Of a stretch of 64,000 nt of DNA, positions 697 through 8,613 are shown in pieces. Location: positions 62,001 through 126,000 of the forward strand of contig FLMG01000135.1 of the NCBI GenBank assembly GCA_900088475.1, given 5' to 3'. The stretch is from Hyphochytrium catenoides (taxonomy: Eukaryota > Protista > Hyphochytriomycota). Under the pieces are notes generated by a model. The model did no database searches. It saw nothing but the letters and a program-made list of their open reading frames with translations, and had not been told where the DNA came from. The position numbers and the translations under genes are program-made. Positions within the stretch are counted from its first letter, which is position 1; every line of letters begins with the position of its first letter.

Positions 697-1125
697 ATGG
701 ACATAAACAGGGTGCGGCCTCCAGCAGTAACCAACTGCCAAGTCGTATGGAACTATATCACATCGTATGATCAGTGGTGGCCAAGCATTGCTTTCACGTG
801 CTTCGATGAGATGGAGAAATTTGGCCTTCAATCTTCGGTCGAGCAGATCATTCTAGAAACTCAATTTGTGGATATACCAGAAGACAAGCTCATATTCCGA
901 CGGTTAGGGTCTAACGTGACGGTGATGAAGGACAACACGCAGGTAAGCCCTATTCTTAGTAAGATGTGGTGCACTTCTAACTCTTACTTTAAGACATACG
1001 TGCTGCCGTACGAAGCGAACTACGAACGTCTGAGCAAAGCCGTTCCGAAGGATATGGACCTAAAACATGAATTTTTGGCGGGCCTTGAAGAAGCAAACCG
1101 CCTAATTCGGCTTAGCAAAGAGGAT
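697..1125 (+). other. PWWP-like domain (first two exons of the CDC6-like gene)
   Basis: CQVVWNYITSYDQWWPSIAF matches the PWWP pattern VWak...PWWPa; LPYEANYERL...EFLAGLEEANRLI resembles the PWWP C-terminal helices. Motif recognition only. Confidence 0.6.
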
Positions 1126-4100
1126 GTGAGTCTTTTATGACCGTTACGTGAACTCCTTCGCCCCGCTTACTGTTTATTGCAGCCAAAGGCTACCCCTATC
1201 CGCCAGCTCCCTTTCGGTAGGAACGGCAGCACAGGCAACACCGGAGATCAGATCCAGGGAAAAGATAAGCTAACATCTAAACAAAAGTGGAAAGCTGTGG
1301 CGCGAGACCTCAAAGCTTCTGGCTGGACGGAGTGGAAAGGGCCTCAGAAAACCATATATTTTAGGCCAGGTATCTCGCCAGGCGAGGGCATCCTTGGTAG
1401 AGACTTCTTTCACGGGGAAGAACAAGTGTTGCGCTATTTGGCTCGGATGGAATCAAAAGACGATGACAGGTTGCCCCAGATAGACAGACTGTCTGAGAGA
1501 AAACGAAATCAGGCATTACACTCACCGCACCACCCTGAGGAAGTTCGCTCTGAGTCTCCAACAGGGAGTGATGCTGCAGCAGTCAACCAGGCTTTACCGT
1601 CCGCGATCAATACAGGAGCGTGCGATCAGAAACAGAATCTTCTGATGGCTCCCGAGTCTATAGCTAACGTGGTGGTTGCTACCCTTTCAACCTTCGCCAA
1701 CGCCCTCCTCAGGATGGATCAACAAGTGGGGGCCGGAGTTGGGAGCAGCGCTTTTGCTAATCCTCAGGCTCTTCAAAGCTTGACAGCTATTCTAGCAGCT
1801 AATGCCTTACCTGTGTCAACGGGCACTGTAGGCGGTCTAGCAGACCTGATGCGAGGACTCGGGTCCAAGTCAACAGACAAAGTGTTACTTGAGAAAGCAT
1901 CAGATGGTGCAGCCGCTTTTCAATCTGACAGTCGCACGGAAGGTTCCTCGAGTGTTGGACTAGCCACTGGTCTGTCCGGTAAGGATATGAGCTCCTCAAT
2001 GGCCGATGTAGCCACAAAAACAAGCTCTGGGTCAGATGCAACAAAGATCCCACTGGGTGGCATGGCAACGACAAGCTCAGTAGAGGAGAATAGAAACCCC
2101 AACCGGGTCGGCTCGGTTGGCGTCGGCCACAATCTCAAAGAAGCAGTGGCCCTACAAAGTGCAAAAAGAGCTCCTTCACGGCAACACTTGGCGGATATTG
2201 AAGAGAAGGGCTTCGACACGATCAAGACAAAGTCAACGCCGCGTACAAATGGGGAGACGGAGAGGGCGGCAGGACAAAAATCTGGACAAAGTCCAGAAAG
2301 TCAAGTCACGCCTGTAACGAAAGTAGGTGTAGAGTTACTCAATTCGGCCATTTCTGACAAGACTTTGACCTCTGATGACGTGGAAACGGAGGTTGAAGAC
2401 GCCTCAAACACGGAGAAGTCGGATGTGTTCGGGATGTCTCGTGCAAACGCTGGGATATTCCAGCCCGACCTTACGTCCAATAGTGAACTAAGCTTTGAAG
2501 AAGTCTGGAAATCCCTAAAGCGCCAAGGTTGGAGGAGAAAGAATGGGCTCTACCTAAGGCCGATTAATGCGGTAGAGTCTAGGGAATCGTATATAGAAGG
2601 TTATTCCGCCTTTAGGACACAGGCCGAGGTGATGCAAGTAGCCGCTTCTGAGAATCTATTGGGAGTGTGGAACAAGACTTGTCCAATCACGCCAAAGCTT
2701 AACCGCATTCCTGCGATGAGCAAGGGAAACCAGCAGATTCCAACAAAGGCGATGGCGAGCAAAATCAACAAACAAACTGAGAAGACTAAAAAGCCAAAGC
2801 CATTCATACCGACAGTTGAAGAGTTAGAGCAAGCTCAACGTCGGCTTCGCGGGCGTCCGCAATGGTGGCATGCATGTTGGAAAGCTTTGTCCGCTGCTGG
2901 ATGGAGCTTTAACGGACGATATACGCGGCCACGGGGTCAAGATTCGAAAAGAACGCGGCGAACCCTGGGAGTTGACGTCTTTGAATCTCAGCAACATGTG
3001 GTGGCCTTCCTTCTCTCTCGCGGGGAACTGCCTGACCTTCCCGATGACGGCATGGCAAACGATTCCGACACCGATGGGTCTGATCTTGGACCTGCAGACG
3101 GAGAGATAAATATAGTGAACAAGGAGGCAGCTATAGCTGTGAAGTCGTCGGACAAACCAATTATCACTGCCCCCAAATCCAAGACTGCGAATTCTTCAAG
3201 GGTCGGCCCTTCTCTCAAGGCAAACAAGACTGACACGTCTTCCGCTGGGAAAAAGTTGTCGCCGGAAAAAAGTGAAGGACCAGAGTGTCATCCTTTTTCT
3301 TTGTTGTGGCAGGAGCTTCAGCAGCTAGGGTGGAAGTGGAGTGCTGGAATGTATAGAGCACCTCGTCCAAGAAGCGAGTTTGGCCAGAAATATGTTGCCG
3401 GTGTGAACATGTTCAATTCAGAAGGAGAAGTTATGGACTACCTCAATGCCAATCCCAGCGTTATGGCACGGCTTTCTTGCCATATTCCACTCAGACCGAC
3501 AATCAACCCTAAGAGAACGGACAGTATCGCGCACAGGAGTCCAATGCCTAAACAGTCACACACACCAACACCACGAGGAAAGAAGGTTGATGACCTTTAT
3601 TTGACAAATTGGCAGTCGATATGGGTTACTCTCAAGTCCGAAGGGTGGGTTTTCCGCAAAGGCTCGGCCCTCTGTAGCTCTTGTTTTCTGAGACCTGGCA
3701 AAGACGTAAAGAATGGTACCCCTGGTGTGGACTACTTTTATGCTAAGGAGGAAGTGCTGCAGTATCTTAAGGAGCAAGGTCGTCAATTCGACACGCTCTT
3801 TCCAGCCACAGACAGCTTAAGTGTACGAATGTCCGGAAAGGGTCGAACAGGCTTTTCGGAAAGCTGTGAGGCTGGTTATTCCTGCCGCCCAGAGTGCGAG
3901 AGTGAAGAAGAAGCCTCTGCGGTGTCAGAAGGGGCGGACGCGGAAGCTAACAGTGGGACGGAAGACGTTCTGACGGAGGAAACGTTGCTTGAACGCATCT
4001 TCATTGGACCTGATGAAGTAGACCTTAAGCAATGGCAAAAGATCTGGGACCACCTAAGGGAACAGGGCTGGAAATGGTGTCATGGTAGCGGCGTGATTTC

Positions 4101-6916
4101 CACATTTCGTTATCGGAAGCCTGGTACTCTCATCAAAACTGGTAGAAAGGGCATTGACTGGTTTGATACACAAGCAGAAGTAGTAAGAAGCTTAGCAAAG
4201 ACGAAAGAGCTCTTCCCAATCTTCGGTCTTTCATGTACCGCCAGTGAGCCTCCGCCTTTAGTGGTCAGCACGTCAAGACGCGTTGAGACGCCTCAAGAAG
4301 CCACTGCAGATGGAAAAGAGACTATGAGCCCGGAGAAGGCTAACGGCGAGAGTAATCTTTCCTCGAGAGGCTTAGGCTTCAGTTCCGGTCACTATCGGAT
4401 CACCTGTGATGATGGTGCTCCCATCTTCTCTTCGCCAAGGAAAAGCTCACCCACTAAAGCGAGATTGCCCAAGAACTTCCTCTTTTACGCGGAAGAGGTT
4501 TCCAAAGTAGAAAGCAAGACTCTTCTTAGGGTCAGTGAGACCCATGGATACGGCAAACACTGCTGGATTCTGGCCTCAGACAGTAAGGGCGAGGTGACAG
4601 TCGAACCTGACAATTCGCAGGAAGATTTGGTCCTCGAGAGTGATGTAGCCAGCGAGCCCAGTCCACACACAGCAAAGCGGGTCCAATTTGAGCTCGCGTC
4701 CCCATTACCGGAAGGCACAAGCAAGAGGAAGAGAAAGGAGGTAAAGTCCCATGTTCCCTCCTTGATATAATCGCGCTAACTCTAGACTGCGACAGTCGGA
4801 GCTAGGAAATGAAGAGACTCCAGCCCGTGACTTGAAGAGGCCAACTGTAGAACCTAGCATGGTTGGCGTATCTCCTCTTGGTCAGCGTTTACCCGTAGAA
4901 GACCCTTTTGCAACTATGGTCCTTTACCCCCTAACATGCGGCTGTCTGCAGACAAAAATCCAGGGCTAAACATATCAGTCGCTGAAACTCTTAAAAGGTC
5001 ACTTCCTACTACTCAGTTCCAAGACAAAAGTGCTGCGATTACAACTATGGGTCTTTTGGAGGTCAGTGCACGCAATAAACGCCAGAGGACTACCTTACTC
5101 AACCTTGTCAGCTAATGATGTGATCAGTCGTGCTTTTTGCCAAGCGGGAAGCCCCCACGCCTGGTGAGTCGCGATGCTGAGAGACGCTTCATCCATGAAT
5201 TCCTAGATCGTTGCATAGCGGGAGGGCCGGGGTCCTCACTATATATCTTTGGGGCCCCTGGTACCGGCAAATCAGCTACGGTTGCACACTGCCTCGCCAA
5301 GATTGATGGTGTCAAAGTTAAGGTACGTTTGTACTACCTTGACCGAGAGCGAGAGGACGTTATCTATCACCAGTCCTGCGTCTTTACACAAGCACAGATG
5401 TTATCTGTGCTTTATCTTTCTTGAGGGCCGAGCCTTCAATTGTTCACTCCAACCTACAGACCTTGTCACTCTGCAGTCTTCTTTCCTATGCTACTTAACG
5501 TGTATCTAATATTGACTGGCACATGGATGTGATAAACTTCTTGCCGGTCCTTTGTAGAGTGTGATGATAAACGCTGGCAGCGTTGGAGATGATAGCCAGT
5601 ACTTAGTCTCCACCATTGTCAAGGAGCTGTTCAACTACAAGTCGGAAGATGGCGATCCTCTCGACTATCTAACTAGCAGAGTGCAGCAAAATGACAAGGA
5701 GACTTGCTGGTAGGGCTTAAATATCGCAAACGCTTTCACATGTTCTTAGCTCATGTTATCTCTATTATCACTACTCGTCCACTTCGCGCTTTGAACATAT
5801 GTAGGGTAATTGTTGTGGATGAGATAGAGAACTGTCTCCATAACAATGTCACCCAGACAATGATCTACAACCTGTTTGCTCTGTCGCATCGTGAAGACAC
5901 ATCGATGGTTCTCATTGGTGAGTCTGGAGACCCAGCTAGATACCTTTCTCGCTATTCCTCACCATTAAGAACAGGGATATCAAACTCGGCTGAGCTTAAA
6001 CAAAGTCCATTTCCGGCTCTTCCCTGGCGGAACTGTAAGTCCTCTTACTCTAACAGAAATGCTATTGGACTCGTAAAATTCAATGGGAAGCAAAAATTGA
6101 CTCTCTTTGGTTCATTATGTTAGGCGAACCTTGTCAGCTTCAGTTTAAGGCGTACAGCAAAGAAGAGCTTCATGATCTCCTGAAAGCAAGAGTTGCCTAT
6201 GCCGCTGCTAAGCTTGGAGTAATGGATGATTCACGCTTGGTCGATCCAGAGGCCCTTGAGCTTTGTGCCCGAACGGTGTCAGCAAACTCTGGAGGCATGC
6301 GAAAGGCGCTAGAGGTTTGCAGGTAAATGCTATCATCCGGCTGTGAATTCCAACATAACTAATAACGTACACTGTAGTCAAGCAGTGAAGGAAGCTGCCA
6401 CGTCACTTAGGGATAGGGATGGCGCTATCGAGGCCGTGCCAGCTCCCCTTATTACCCTTCTTTCCATGAAGAGGGTCCTTCAAAATCTAAGCAGCTTATC
6501 ATTACGTGAGGCAGTCAATGCGCTTCCATTCCGCTCAAAGGTTAGTCATTTCACCTTGTGAAGGGAATAAGGCATCTCTCACCCATTGATTCTCTCAGGT
6601 TGTCTTATGTGCAGTGCTTCTGCTAGTTTCGGAGGTGGCCAAGCCTATAGCTTGGTCCAAATTGTTTGAACAATATGCCATGTGCTCTCAGCAGGTTCTT
6701 CGAACCAGCTTAGCCCGGCCTCCTCCCTCTCAGTTCAACGACCTAGTTGATCTACTGGCTGAGAAAGGCTTTCTGCGGACCGTCTCAGAGAAAGTATATA
6801 GCCCTAGTGGGAGATCGGAAGCAGCCATTGTACTGACCGCCAATGTTGAAGATTTGAAGGCCATCCTAGCCAAAGAGAAGGGCCTGAACGCCATTCTAGC
6901 TGCCGAGAACCTCTAA
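697..6916 (+). CDS. CDC6: Cdc6/Orc1-family AAA+ replication licensing ATPase with a very long N-terminal extension (PWWP-like domain plus six MBD-like repeats); multi-exon
   Basis: Predicted exons 697-942, 994-1125, 1183-4740, 4796-4880, 4952-5061, 5128-5322, 5558-5709, 5805-5917, 5975-6034, 6124-6322, 6378-6540, 6599-6916 join in frame through GT..AG introns. Cdc6 motifs: LVSRDAERRFI, SLYIFGAPGTGKS (Walker A), VIVVDEIE (Walker B), LIGISNS (sensor 1), FKAYSKEELHDLLKARV, ALELCARTVSANSGGMRKALEVC (sensor 2), and a C-terminal winged-helix-like segment FNDLVDLLAEKGFL. The 5128-6916 part is secure; the link to 697-4740 depends on two small predicted exons. Confidence 0.8.
1288..4197 (+). repeat. 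Six divergent copies of a ~50-aa protein module (about 1288-1443, 2494-2646, 2866-3015, 3295-3447, 3610-3771, 4033-4197)
   Basis: WKAVARDLKASGW..YFRPG..GRDFFHGEEQVLRYL; FEEVWKSLKRQGW..YLRP..GYSAFRTQAEVMQV; WHACWKALSAAGW..YTRP..GVDVFESQQHVVAFL; FSLLWQELQQLGW..YRAP..GVNMFNSEGEVMDYL; WQSIWVTLKSEGW..FLRPG..GVDYFYAKEEVLQYL; WQKIWDHLREQGW..YRKPG..GIDWFDTQAEVVRSL. Confidence 0.9.
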
Positions 6917-7140: not shown

Positions 7141-7788
7141 TCAGTTTGCATGTTTTCTCGCTTGCTCCAGCTCTTGGAGCTTCCTATTTGCTCGTTGTCT
7201 TTCTTCCTCGTCTAGCTGTTCTCGTGACTGTGCTGTGTGTTGGACGATGCGCGACAAGAGCGACTTGTTGGGCAGTAACCTGCCTGGCTTAAGATACTGT
7301 CATGAAGGGAACAATGCAAAAACGCGCAACGTAAGCTGCTGTTATGTTCTGCAGGCACCAAAGCGGACTCCTTATCTCTTTACCTCTGAAGATCCGCCCT
7401 TGACTGCAGTCACGGCACGCTTGGGGAGGGCAAACCTCGATCTCCTCTCGTGCCTTTGGTTTTGGTCCTCCTTATCCCGAGGGGAACGGCTGCGACTGAC
7501 TCGACTTCTGTCTCCCATGCTGTAGCTACCCGCTCCTCTAACTCTGTCCCGACTGCGACTTCGCTTTTTTTCTCTACTATCAGACCTTCCTCTACCTCGC
7601 CTACTACTATCGGACCTTTCTCTACCTCGTCTTACTCTAATGCTACCATTTCGACGAGAGCGTTCCTCGGAATCCGTGTCCGATCTGTGACTTCTTCTCC
7701 CTCTCTCTCTTACTCGCCCCCTGCCGCTATCGCTGTGATGGGACGAGGATGAACTAGCCGTTCTCGACCTCTTCCCTGTTCTGTCCAT
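7141..7788 (-). CDS. Arg/Ser-rich (RS-domain) nuclear protein, 2 exons
   Basis: Exon 7788-7384 is RS/RD/RE-dipeptide rich (SRSRSPR). Intron 7383-7297 (GTAAAG..ACAG) leads to exon 7296-7141, YLKPGRLLPNKSLLSRIVQHT...RQRANRKLQELEQARKHAN*. Confidence 0.7.
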
Positions 7789-8613
7789 CACCTCTAACGG
7801 TATGATGCCAGCAATTTTGTTTACTGTCCACTGACACCGGAACTTTAATTGACGCGGAAGGTGAAGACGGTTCTCTAGGGCTATAGCTTCGTGCAGAACG
7901 GCGTTAGTTGCTCTGCATTTAAGCCCAAAACTCCTCCATTAGGTGGCGCTCGTCTTGTCTTTCTCGTCTTCAGTCCTGGGATGGCAGAGTACGCTAACCA
8001 ACTAATAAGAATGCGCCATGCCTGTACCCGCGAATATCCCTATGCCAGATCTTGTCAGCCGTCGATCTGAATGGGTAGTAGAAGAACACCTTGCGTTGGC
8101 TCCTAAGAGAAGAGAGATCCGTGGATATCCTAGCCAGGTAAACTTATGAGCTGGTAGCAGTGAGCATGGGCCCCAGCCATCGTGGTGGCCACAACTGTTG
8201 ATGTCGTGTGGTCTGTCGCCGCTCCCTTCTTGCAGAAGCGACATTGATCACATCTGTCATCGGCGGATGTTCGAGAAGCGTTGCTTCCTACAGTAGAAAT
8301 ATTTGTACGGCACAAAACCGATTTATCAGCTCCGGGAGTAGATCTGAAGAGCACAATGATGAATCTTCGAGGTTTGTGTGGAAGGAGCTCTTGTTTTCTT
8401 CAGGAATAGGAAAAGTTGTGTGTGTTGGAGACTTGAGACGACAAGACGGTAGATCTGAGTTGCCAGGTTACGGAGCTTTGGCACTCTTCATGGCAGAAAG
8501 ACAGGCTGAGAAGCAGAAAATACTCTCAAAGTCTATTGGCTTCTTCAGCTCTTGTCATCTTACAAGCTGTACTCCGGAGGCCGCGTCAGGGACTGTGACT
8601 TCACGAAGCAAAG

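What the first reader, a model, noticed from the sequence alone, without database searches (positions are those of the whole stretch)
1288..4197. Unnamed ~50-aa Trp-rich module repeated six times, resembling the MBD fold
Seen: six copies, with consensus [WF]xx[VICL]WxxLxxxGW-x(n)-[YF]xRP-x(n)-Gx[DN]xF-xxxx-EVxx[YF]L, separated by long low-complexity linkers. Copy 1 has A in place of the second W. The copies are too divergent to stand out as DNA repeats, so the expansion is old and conserved at protein level. Established: MBD domains have GW...YYxxPxG...RSxxEVxxYL. Inference: this is an MBD-like DNA-binding module with an added N-terminal helix and without the obvious methyl-CpG-contacting RS motif. 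It may read unmethylated DNA, another modification, or a protein partner. I recall similar motifs in uncharacterised oomycete and algal proteins, but have not verified this.
Basis: partly seen in the sequence, partly recalled or inferred. Interest (0 to 1): 0.78.

Follow-up and report, generated by a model that had tools for sequence, protein, structure and literature searches.

The report
Six-copy chromatin module on replication-origin ATPase
The six repeats are real, very divergent copies of a small protein domain found across stramenopiles and listed in Pfam only as DUF7650. The domain is repeatedly fused to replication-origin proteins (Orc1/Cdc6, Orc2, Orc5), so it is probably how these organisms tether the origin machinery to chromatin, but its link to the methyl-DNA-binding MBD fold is only weakly supported.

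Summary
Observation confirmed. The 1197-codon ORF at 1177-4770 (+) holds exactly six ~55-60-aa modules. A profile of any five finds the sixth (E 5e-8 to 1e-13). A profile built only from database relatives finds the same six (30-59 bits) and nothing else in the window.

The module is not unnamed. A profile search found 511 proteins, and 23 of 58 scanned match Pfam DUF7650 (PF24662) on the same residues. The window's own copies escape that Pfam model. All 11 taxonomically identified members are stramenopiles. I found no paper on it.

The new point is context. The host gene continues into an Orc1/Cdc6-type ATPase. Relatives carry 2-18 copies in front of Orc1/Cdc6, Orc2, Orc5 or BRCT domains.

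Best reading (about 0.5): a multivalent chromatin/DNA-tethering array for origin licensing, not a methyl-CpG reader. This scan's first stage had already read this same stretch once before, as one giant Cdc6/Orc1 gene.

The parts
697..1125 (+). Putative exon 1. It starts at the ATG at 697 and carries a PWWP-like V-V-W...W-W-P motif.
   Evidence: It is in the same frame as the big ORF, which has no ATG before copy 1. The PWWP reading rests on the motif only: Pfam gives 0 hits, the PDB search finds nothing relevant, and BLASTP against relative P0103, which has a weak PWWP match, gives E 0.4.
1126..1182 (+). Putative 57-nt intron, GTGAGT...TTGCAG. It keeps the frame and contains the TGA at 1138-1140.
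   Evidence: Read directly from the sequence. There is no RNA evidence.
1183..4740 (+). Main exon, within ORF 1177-4770. It holds the six modules and their low-complexity linkers.
1255..1467 (+). Module copy 1. It has Ala in place of the second Trp.
   Evidence: 52.3 bits, E 2e-18, with the profile built from database relatives only. Leave-one-out E 5.5e-8.
2467..2652 (+). Module copy 2, the most degenerate copy.
   Evidence: 30.1 bits. Leave-one-out E 2.3e-9.
2851..3021 (+). Module copy 3. An R-G-R-P (AT-hook-like core) lies at 2848-2859, at its start.
   Evidence: 33.0 bits. RGRP motif.
3265..3459 (+). Module copy 4.
   Evidence: 40.0 bits.
3604..3786 (+). Module copy 5.
   Evidence: 58.7 bits. 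AlphaFold model of window 3574-3831: helix 5-22, strands 26-28 and 37-39, short strand residues at 50 and 54-55, helix 58-67. Core blocks have pLDDT 86-92.
4021..4203 (+). Module copy 6.
   Evidence: 51.8 bits. AlphaFold model of window 4018-4221: mean pLDDT 86.3, pTM 0.69, helix 3-15, strands 19-22 and 30-33, short strand residues at 44 and 48-49, helix 52-62.
4741..5126 (+). Putative intron, GTAAAG...GATCAG, that would join the repeat exon in frame to the ATPase exon. Small exons inside it are not excluded.
   Evidence: Enumeration of in-frame GT..AG joins. Oomycete relatives P0041 and P0149 are colinear with the window: repeats first, then Walker A.
5127..6916 (+). Orc1/Cdc6-type AAA+ ATPase exons, with the Walker A exon at 5137-5421 and the lid at 6117-6323.
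   Evidence: Pfam AAA_16 at E 8.7e-9 and Cdc6-ORC-like_ATPase_lid at E 2.4e-4. The PDB search gives human CDC6 at 1e-5 and ORC1 at 5.5e-4.

Best explanation
The six repeats are old, divergent copies of a stramenopile-wide globular domain of about 55-60 residues, catalogued as Pfam DUF7650. It is modelled as helix, three-stranded sheet, helix.

In this genome, probably Hyphochytrium catenoides, the copies form the N-terminal extension of an Orc1/Cdc6-type replication-licensing ATPase. They stand where other eukaryotes' Orc1 carries a BAH domain.

I infer that the array is a multivalent tether. Each module makes a weak contact with a chromatin feature (DNA or nucleosome), and the flexible linkers let several modules add up. 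This holds the origin-recognition machinery on chromatin, much as the nine AT-hooks of fission-yeast Orc4 do.

It is not a canonical methyl-CpG reader.

- **Shown:** the repeats, the family and its taxonomic range, the predicted secondary-structure layout, and the recurrent fusion to ORC subunits.
- **Inferred:** the single-gene join in this window, chromatin or DNA binding, and the tethering role.
For: - **Repeats real:**
- **Family:** 511 proteins at E<=1e-3, 146 at E<=1e-10, mostly with 2-18 copies. DUF7650 hits fall on the same residues as my profile hits.
- **Taxa:** diatoms, a synurophyte, Chrysoparadoxa, oomycetes and a thraustochytrid.
- **Partner domains in 101 relatives scanned:**
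  - Orc2 RecA-like plus winged helix after 18 or 15 copies (P0001, P0002).
  - Orc5 after 8 or 12 copies (P0003, P0004), and also in P0014 and P0015.
  - Orc1/Cdc6 AAA+, lid and winged helix in Thraustotheca P0041 and Albugo P0149.
  - About 16 ORC-type proteins in all and 8 with BRCT, plus SAP, PPC and a weak PWWP match.
- **No partner outside DNA and chromatin work** was seen, apart from single sub-threshold or stray hits.
- **Window gene:** colinear with P0041 and P0149, and an in-frame join to the Walker A exon exists. No BAH is detected in it, and the genome's one BAH match is on another contig.
- **Fold:** the layout is the same in two independent models.
Against: - No binding experiment exists, and no paper was found.
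- Mean net charge of 433 family domains is only +0.46, and 49% are positive. The window's copies are +2, +2, +5, 0, +2 and +7.
- The start of the last helix is acidic (S-E-[ED]-[DE]) where MBD has R-S-K and dsRBD has K-K-x-A-K. A direct MBD-type or dsRBD-type nucleic-acid contact is therefore doubtful.
- The exon join to the ATPase rests on frame logic and colinearity, not on RNA data.
- P0041's ATPase part scores higher against a second, compact Cdc6-like gene on contig C474 than against the window's split exons. Orc1 versus Cdc6 identity is therefore open.
Confidence: 0.5

Rival explanations
1. It is a protein-binding or histone-binding module rather than a DNA binder. On this view it resembles the MBD-fold domains of SETDB1/2 and MBD5/6, which hold protein partners. 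Its conserved aromatic residues plus acidic residues would grip a basic or methylated histone tail, or another replication factor.
For: - The family's net charge is near zero.
- D43, E48, E/D49 and D/E50 are conserved alongside eight conserved aromatic positions.
- The neighbouring domains (a PWWP-like motif, PHD/RING in L017, BRCT) are themselves readers of protein marks.
Against: - Most of the conserved aromatics are likely core residues of a 55-residue domain, and I could not inspect solvent exposure.
- The window's own copies are net basic.
- No partner is known.
Confidence: 0.27
2. It is a dsRBD-like or HicA-like helix-sheet-helix domain that binds structured RNA or RNA-DNA hybrids. It would link ORC and repair proteins to RNA.
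For: - The layout, with both helices, is that of dsRBD-like folds.
- There are weak HicA hits on the helix-plus-G-W part: Pfam E 0.002 in P0002 and PDB HicA3 at E 0.43.
Against: - The basic K-K-x-A-K start of helix 2 and the G-P-x-H loop of dsRBDs are absent.
- Pfam dsrm never hits.
Confidence: 0.1
3. It is a reader of modified DNA (5mC, 6mA or another mark), that is, a functional MBD equivalent.
For: - Motif colinearity with MBD: G-W, then Y-x-x-P-G, then F-x-S-x-x-[ED]-[VL]-x-x-[YF], with the last block at the same spacing as MBD's F-R-S-K-x-E-[LV]-x-x-Y. This is my reading against established MBD sequences.
- MBD clusters are the next named neighbours in the language-model search, at 0.77, which is a lead only.
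- UniRef names family member P0177 'MBD domain-containing protein'.
Against: - The position of the second arginine finger (between F and S) is variable (T, L, V, E), and no conserved Arg follows G-W.
- The Pfam MBD model hits none of the repeats or relatives scanned.
- The genome has a separate canonical MBD.
Confidence: 0.06

Closest known systems
Pfam DUF7650 (PF24662), a domain of unknown function
   Same: This is the same domain family. DUF7650 matches 23 of 58 relatives scanned, on the very residues my repeat profile matches, for example P0005 834-892, P0021 299-358 and P0129 3-65.
   Different: The window's six copies get no DUF7650 hit even at E<=10, so standard annotation leaves them blank. 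Pfam assigns no function, and I found no paper.
Methyl-CpG-binding domain (MBD/TAM; Pfam PF01429)
   Different: - It has an extra N-terminal helix.
- It has an insertion of roughly 12 residues between strands 2 and 3.
- Both arginine fingers are missing and the helix start is acidic.
- No profile-level sequence match was found.
- It occurs in arrays of 2-18 copies, whereas MBD proteins usually have one.
dsRBD-like fold (dsRBD, HicA)
   Different: It has no dsRBD sequence motifs, identity is mostly low, and its partner domains deal with DNA replication and repair rather than RNA.
Fission-yeast Orc4 N-terminal AT-hook array (established knowledge)
   Same: It has the same logic: many copies of a small binding module on the N-terminus of an ORC subunit, giving multivalent origin and chromatin targeting.
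   Different: AT-hooks are short unstructured peptides with a known AT-rich DNA target. This is a folded domain with an unknown ligand, and it sits on three different ORC subunits.
Orc1 BAH domain of animals, fungi and plants (established knowledge)
   Same: It occupies the same position, the N-terminal chromatin-reading extension of an Orc1-type ATPase.
   Different: The fold is unrelated. No BAH was detected in this gene.

Membership tests
Pfam DUF7650 (PF24662) | Match to the Pfam model at or above its 27-bit cut-off. | tested here: not met
   No hit for the whole ORF or for the four single copies scanned (1, 4, 5, 6) at E<=10. A six-frame search of the genome with the model finds nothing.
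Pfam DUF7650 (PF24662) | Significant homology to sequences that do match the model, over the same residues. | tested here: met
   A profile of the six copies finds 511 proteins, and 23 of 58 scanned carry DUF7650 at the same positions. The reverse profile, built from database relatives only, finds all six copies at 30-59 bits.
MBD (PF01429) | Sequence-profile match to MBD. | tested here: not met
   The Pfam MBD model hits none of the window copies or of the relatives scanned. The family profile finds no MBD in the PDB at E<=10. hhalign against the genome's own MBD gives probability 0.5%.
MBD (PF01429) | Three-stranded sheet plus helix core that superposes on solved MBDs. | tested here: inconclusive
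MBD (PF01429) | The two arginine fingers and the Asp/Tyr that contact methyl-CpG. | tested here: not met
   Column frequencies over 364 distinct family domains show that the residue between F45 and S47 is variable and that no conserved Arg follows G-W.
dsRBD / HicA (dsRBD-like fold) | Helix, three strands, helix. | tested here: met
   Both models show the two helices and two clear strands, with the third strand seen only as 1-2-residue bridges.
dsRBD / HicA (dsRBD-like fold) | Conserved basic K-K-x-A-K at the start of helix 2, and a family profile match. | tested here: not met
   The start of the helix is S-E-[ED]-[DE]. Pfam dsrm never hits, and HicA hits only at E 0.002 in one relative.
Orc1/Cdc6 AAA+ (the host gene) | Walker A AAA+ module with a Cdc6/ORC lid. 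| tested here: met
   AAA_16 at E 8.7e-9 and the lid at E 2.4e-4, which is below Pfam's cut-off. Human CDC6 and ORC1 are the best PDB matches.
Orc1/Cdc6 AAA+ (the host gene) | The repeats and the ATPase lie on one transcript. | not testable with these tools
   Only frame logic and colinearity with P0041 and P0149 are available. No RNA data are at hand.

The most novel reading that the evidence does not exclude
Stramenopiles specify where ORC sits on chromatin with a lineage-specific folded module. It would be an MBD-derived domain that lost methyl-CpG reading and was multiplied into arrays on Orc1, Orc2 and Orc5, so that a diatom ORC could carry more than 30 copies. This would replace the BAH and AT-hook solutions of other eukaryotes and read a chromatin or DNA feature not yet identified.
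Probability: 0.3. Interest if true: 0.8.

Novelty: new variant of a known kind. Interest (0 to 1): 0.6.

Why it matters
How ORC chooses its sites differs between eukaryotic lineages and is unknown for stramenopiles, a group that includes diatoms, oomycete plant pathogens and kelps.

A single small domain appears in arrays on three ORC subunits and on BRCT proteins across the whole group. That gives a concrete, testable handle on the question. One could express the array, find its ligand, delete it and map ORC.

It also attaches a functional hypothesis to a Pfam DUF. And it shows that the current Pfam model misses divergent members such as the hyphochytrid copies here.

Tried and rejected
- **Word-index protein search** with residues 430-1020 found nothing.
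- **MBD alignment for a profile-profile test.** I tried to assemble one from this genome's canonical MBD. The word search found nothing and the metagenome scan found nothing. Only a single-sequence hhalign could be run, and it was not significant.
- **Foldseek against the PDB** gave no match at E<=1e-3.
- **Pfam DUF7028** gave weak hits on two repeat copies but nothing in this genome. I left it as a lead.
- **PWWP reading of exon 1.** I could not confirm it beyond the motif.
- **AT-hook idea for the linkers.** R-G-R-P occurs 9 times in 150 relatives against 2.7 expected, and once in the window. That is too weak to build on.
- **Orc1 versus Cdc6** could not be settled.
- **Spliced model.** I searched it exon by exon and did not submit a joined sequence.
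- **Model coordinates** are not exposed, so I could not check surface exposure of the conserved aromatic and acidic residues.

Full report
**1.

The window has a 1197-codon open frame at 1177..4770 on the + strand.

The six pieces align over about 65 columns. L, G, W, G, P, G, F and V are invariant, and identity to copy 1 is 23-30% (A1).

Three tests show this is far beyond chance:
- A profile built from any five copies finds the sixth at E 5.5e-8 to 1.4e-13 (30-48 bits). The best of 5000 shuffles of that copy reaches 10-14 bits.
- A profile built only from database relatives, with no window sequence in it, finds exactly six domains of 30-59 bits.
- That same profile finds no other copy in any frame of the 64 kb.

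The six domains lie at 1255-1467, 2467-2652, 2851-3021, 3265-3459, 3604-3786 and 4021-4203.

There is no DNA-level repeat, and the linkers are 37-334 aa of biased composition. Its literal consensus is a little too strict for copies 2, 3, 4 and 6.

**2. Gene model.**

The ORF has no in-frame ATG before copy 1. An ORF in the same frame starts at the ATG at 697. It is separated from the big ORF only by a 57-nt GTGAGT...TTGCAG stretch (1126-1182) that holds the stop codon. I read this as exon 1 plus a phase-preserving intron.

Downstream, exons from about 5127 to 6916 encode an AAA+ module:
- Pfam gives AAA_16 at E 8.7e-9 and the Cdc6/ORC lid at E 2.4e-4.
- The best solved relatives are human CDC6 and ORC1.
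- A GTAAAG...GATCAG intron at 4741-5126 would join the frames.

Seven database relatives have the repeats followed by the same Walker A region. They include full Orc1/Cdc6-type proteins of the oomycetes Thraustotheca clavata (P0041) and Albugo laibachii (P0149). So the fusion is very probably real here too, but I have no RNA evidence. I searched the model exon by exon and did not submit a joined sequence.

Whether the gene is Orc1 or Cdc6 stays open. A compact Cdc6-like paralogue lies on contig C474 and a further lid-bearing gene on C2111. The long N-terminal extension favours Orc1. No BAH domain is detected in this gene, and the genome's one BAH match is on another contig.

**3. Organism.**

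The assembly has 4759 records and 61 Mb. The published Hyphochytrium catenoides assembly has 4758 scaffolds plus a mitochondrial record (PMC5795050). I take the identification as probable.

**4. The module is a family, and it has a Pfam number.**

The word-index search found nothing. A full profile search with the six copies found 511 proteins at E<=1e-3 and 146 at E<=1e-10. Nearly all have 2-18 copies.

The family consensus, in words, is:
- an aromatic, then two residues, then an aliphatic and a Trp;
- two residues on, a Leu, then three residues and G-W;
- a short basic hairpin often reading G-x-G-L;
- Y-x-[RK]-P-G;
- a variable loop ending in G-x-D-[YF]-F-x-S;
- two or three acidic residues, then V-x-x-[FY].

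Pfam DUF7650 (PF24662) matches 23 of 58 relatives scanned, on the same residues as my profile. The window's own copies get no Pfam hit at all, even at E<=10.

No paper in the library mentions DUF7650 or DUF7028, and three topical searches found nothing relevant.

Every taxonomically identified member is a stramenopile:
- diatoms: Cyclotella, two Thalassiosira, Discostella and Dactyliosolen;
- other ochrophytes: Mallomonas and Chrysoparadoxa;
- oomycetes: Albugo and Thraustotheca;
- a thraustochytrid.

This genome has only seven copies: the six here, and one at the N-terminus of an 1178-aa PHD/RING-type protein on contig C2254.

**5. Fold.**

I built two AlphaFold models from an alignment of 35-37 natural copies.
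- Copy 6: mean pLDDT 86.3, pTM 0.69.
- Copy 5: core blocks at pLDDT 86-92, flanks disordered.

Both give the same layout: a long N-terminal helix, two clear strands, a short third strand, and a C-terminal helix.

Two soft leads point the same way. The language-model search lists MBD clusters next after the family's own diatom cluster, but at 0.77, which is below the level that counts. UniRef calls member P0177 an 'MBD domain-containing protein', although the Pfam MBD model does not hit it.

Against this:
- no profile-level sequence link to MBD could be shown;
- weak HicA-type hits fall on the helix-plus-G-W half.

My reading is that the fold is a small helix-sheet-helix sandwich. An origin from MBD by adding a helix and a loop is the most likely history, at about even odds, but it is not demonstrated.

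Neither condition is met.

**6. What it does not do.**

The position of MBD's second arginine finger, between the conserved F and S, is variable. No conserved arginine follows G-W. The start of the last helix is acidic, where MBD and dsRBD place their nucleic-acid-contacting basic residues. Mean net charge of 433 domains is +0.46.

A canonical methyl-CpG reader is therefore very unlikely, and the genome has a separate canonical MBD on contig C2628.

**7. What it most likely does.**

The strongest evidence is context. I scanned 101 relatives.
- About 16 are ORC-type proteins.
  - Orc2 follows 18 or 15 copies (P0001, P0002).
  - Orc5 follows 8 or 12 copies (P0003, P0004), and is also found in P0014 (with a SAP domain) and P0015.
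  - Orc1/Cdc6-type ATPases follow the repeats in P0041, P0149 and five truncated models.
- Eight carry BRCT domains.
- Single cases carry PPC or a weak PWWP match.

Nothing points outside the nucleus. Three different subunits of one complex have acquired arrays of the same module. In the diatom-like Orc2 of L008, neighbouring copies are still nearly identical, so arrays keep growing by tandem duplication.

The closest working analogy is the AT-hook array of fission-yeast Orc4, and by position the BAH domain of Orc1. Both comparisons rest on established knowledge.

I therefore propose a multivalent chromatin or DNA tether for origin licensing and for replication and repair factors. I put this at about 0.5.

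The main rival, at about 0.27, is that the ligand is a protein or histone tail. This fits the neutral charge, the acidic and aromatic conservation, and the SETDB2-type match. RNA binding and modified-DNA reading are minor rivals.

**8. Verdict.**

- The domain is catalogued but uncharacterised.
- The ORC association is the point worth following, and I found no paper describing it.
- This same stretch was already noted by the scan's first stage as one giant Cdc6/Orc1 gene (s1-341956).

Noticed in passing
L017:5071-8607 (G000:C2254:19070-22606): This is the genome's only other copy of the module (E 4.6e-4). It opens an 1178-aa protein with long Met/Gly/Pro-rich low complexity and a C-terminal PHD/RING-type zinc finger (Prok-RING_1 at E 4.6e-6).
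   Followed up: partly
L009:1291-1773 (G000:C2628): A canonical MBD (PF01429, 33.7 bits, above the cut-off) lies in a 160-aa ORF. It has an insertion between its first strand and the F-I-D-P-S-G-R turn. No relatives turned up in the word search or the metagenome scan.
   Followed up: partly
L018 (G000:C474:64-2131): A compact Orc1/Cdc6-type paralogue without a long N-terminal extension. Oomycete P0041's ATPase part matches it better (65 and 61 bits) than it matches the window's split exons. It is probably the Cdc6 of this genome.
   Followed up: partly
window 2848-2859 and 4723-4737: An R-G-R-P (AT-hook-like core) lies at the start of copy 3, and a K-R-K-R-K run (nuclear-localisation-like) lies at the end of the repeat exon.
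   Followed up: partly
window 4204-4740 (aa 1010-1188 of the ORF): The C-terminal 180 residues after copy 6 include a stretch that looks ordered (around G-H-Y-R-I-T-C-D-D ... C-W-I-L-A-S-D). It has no Pfam match and I did not model it.
   Followed up: no
L008:4364-6820: In a diatom-like Orc2 (P0002), six consecutive module copies are nearly identical to one another. This indicates recent tandem expansion, in contrast to the old, divergent copies in the window.
   Followed up: partly
window 7372-7791 (-): A 139-aa ORF extremely rich in Arg/Ser/Asp (RS-domain-like), just downstream of the ATPase gene on the opposite strand.
   Followed up: no
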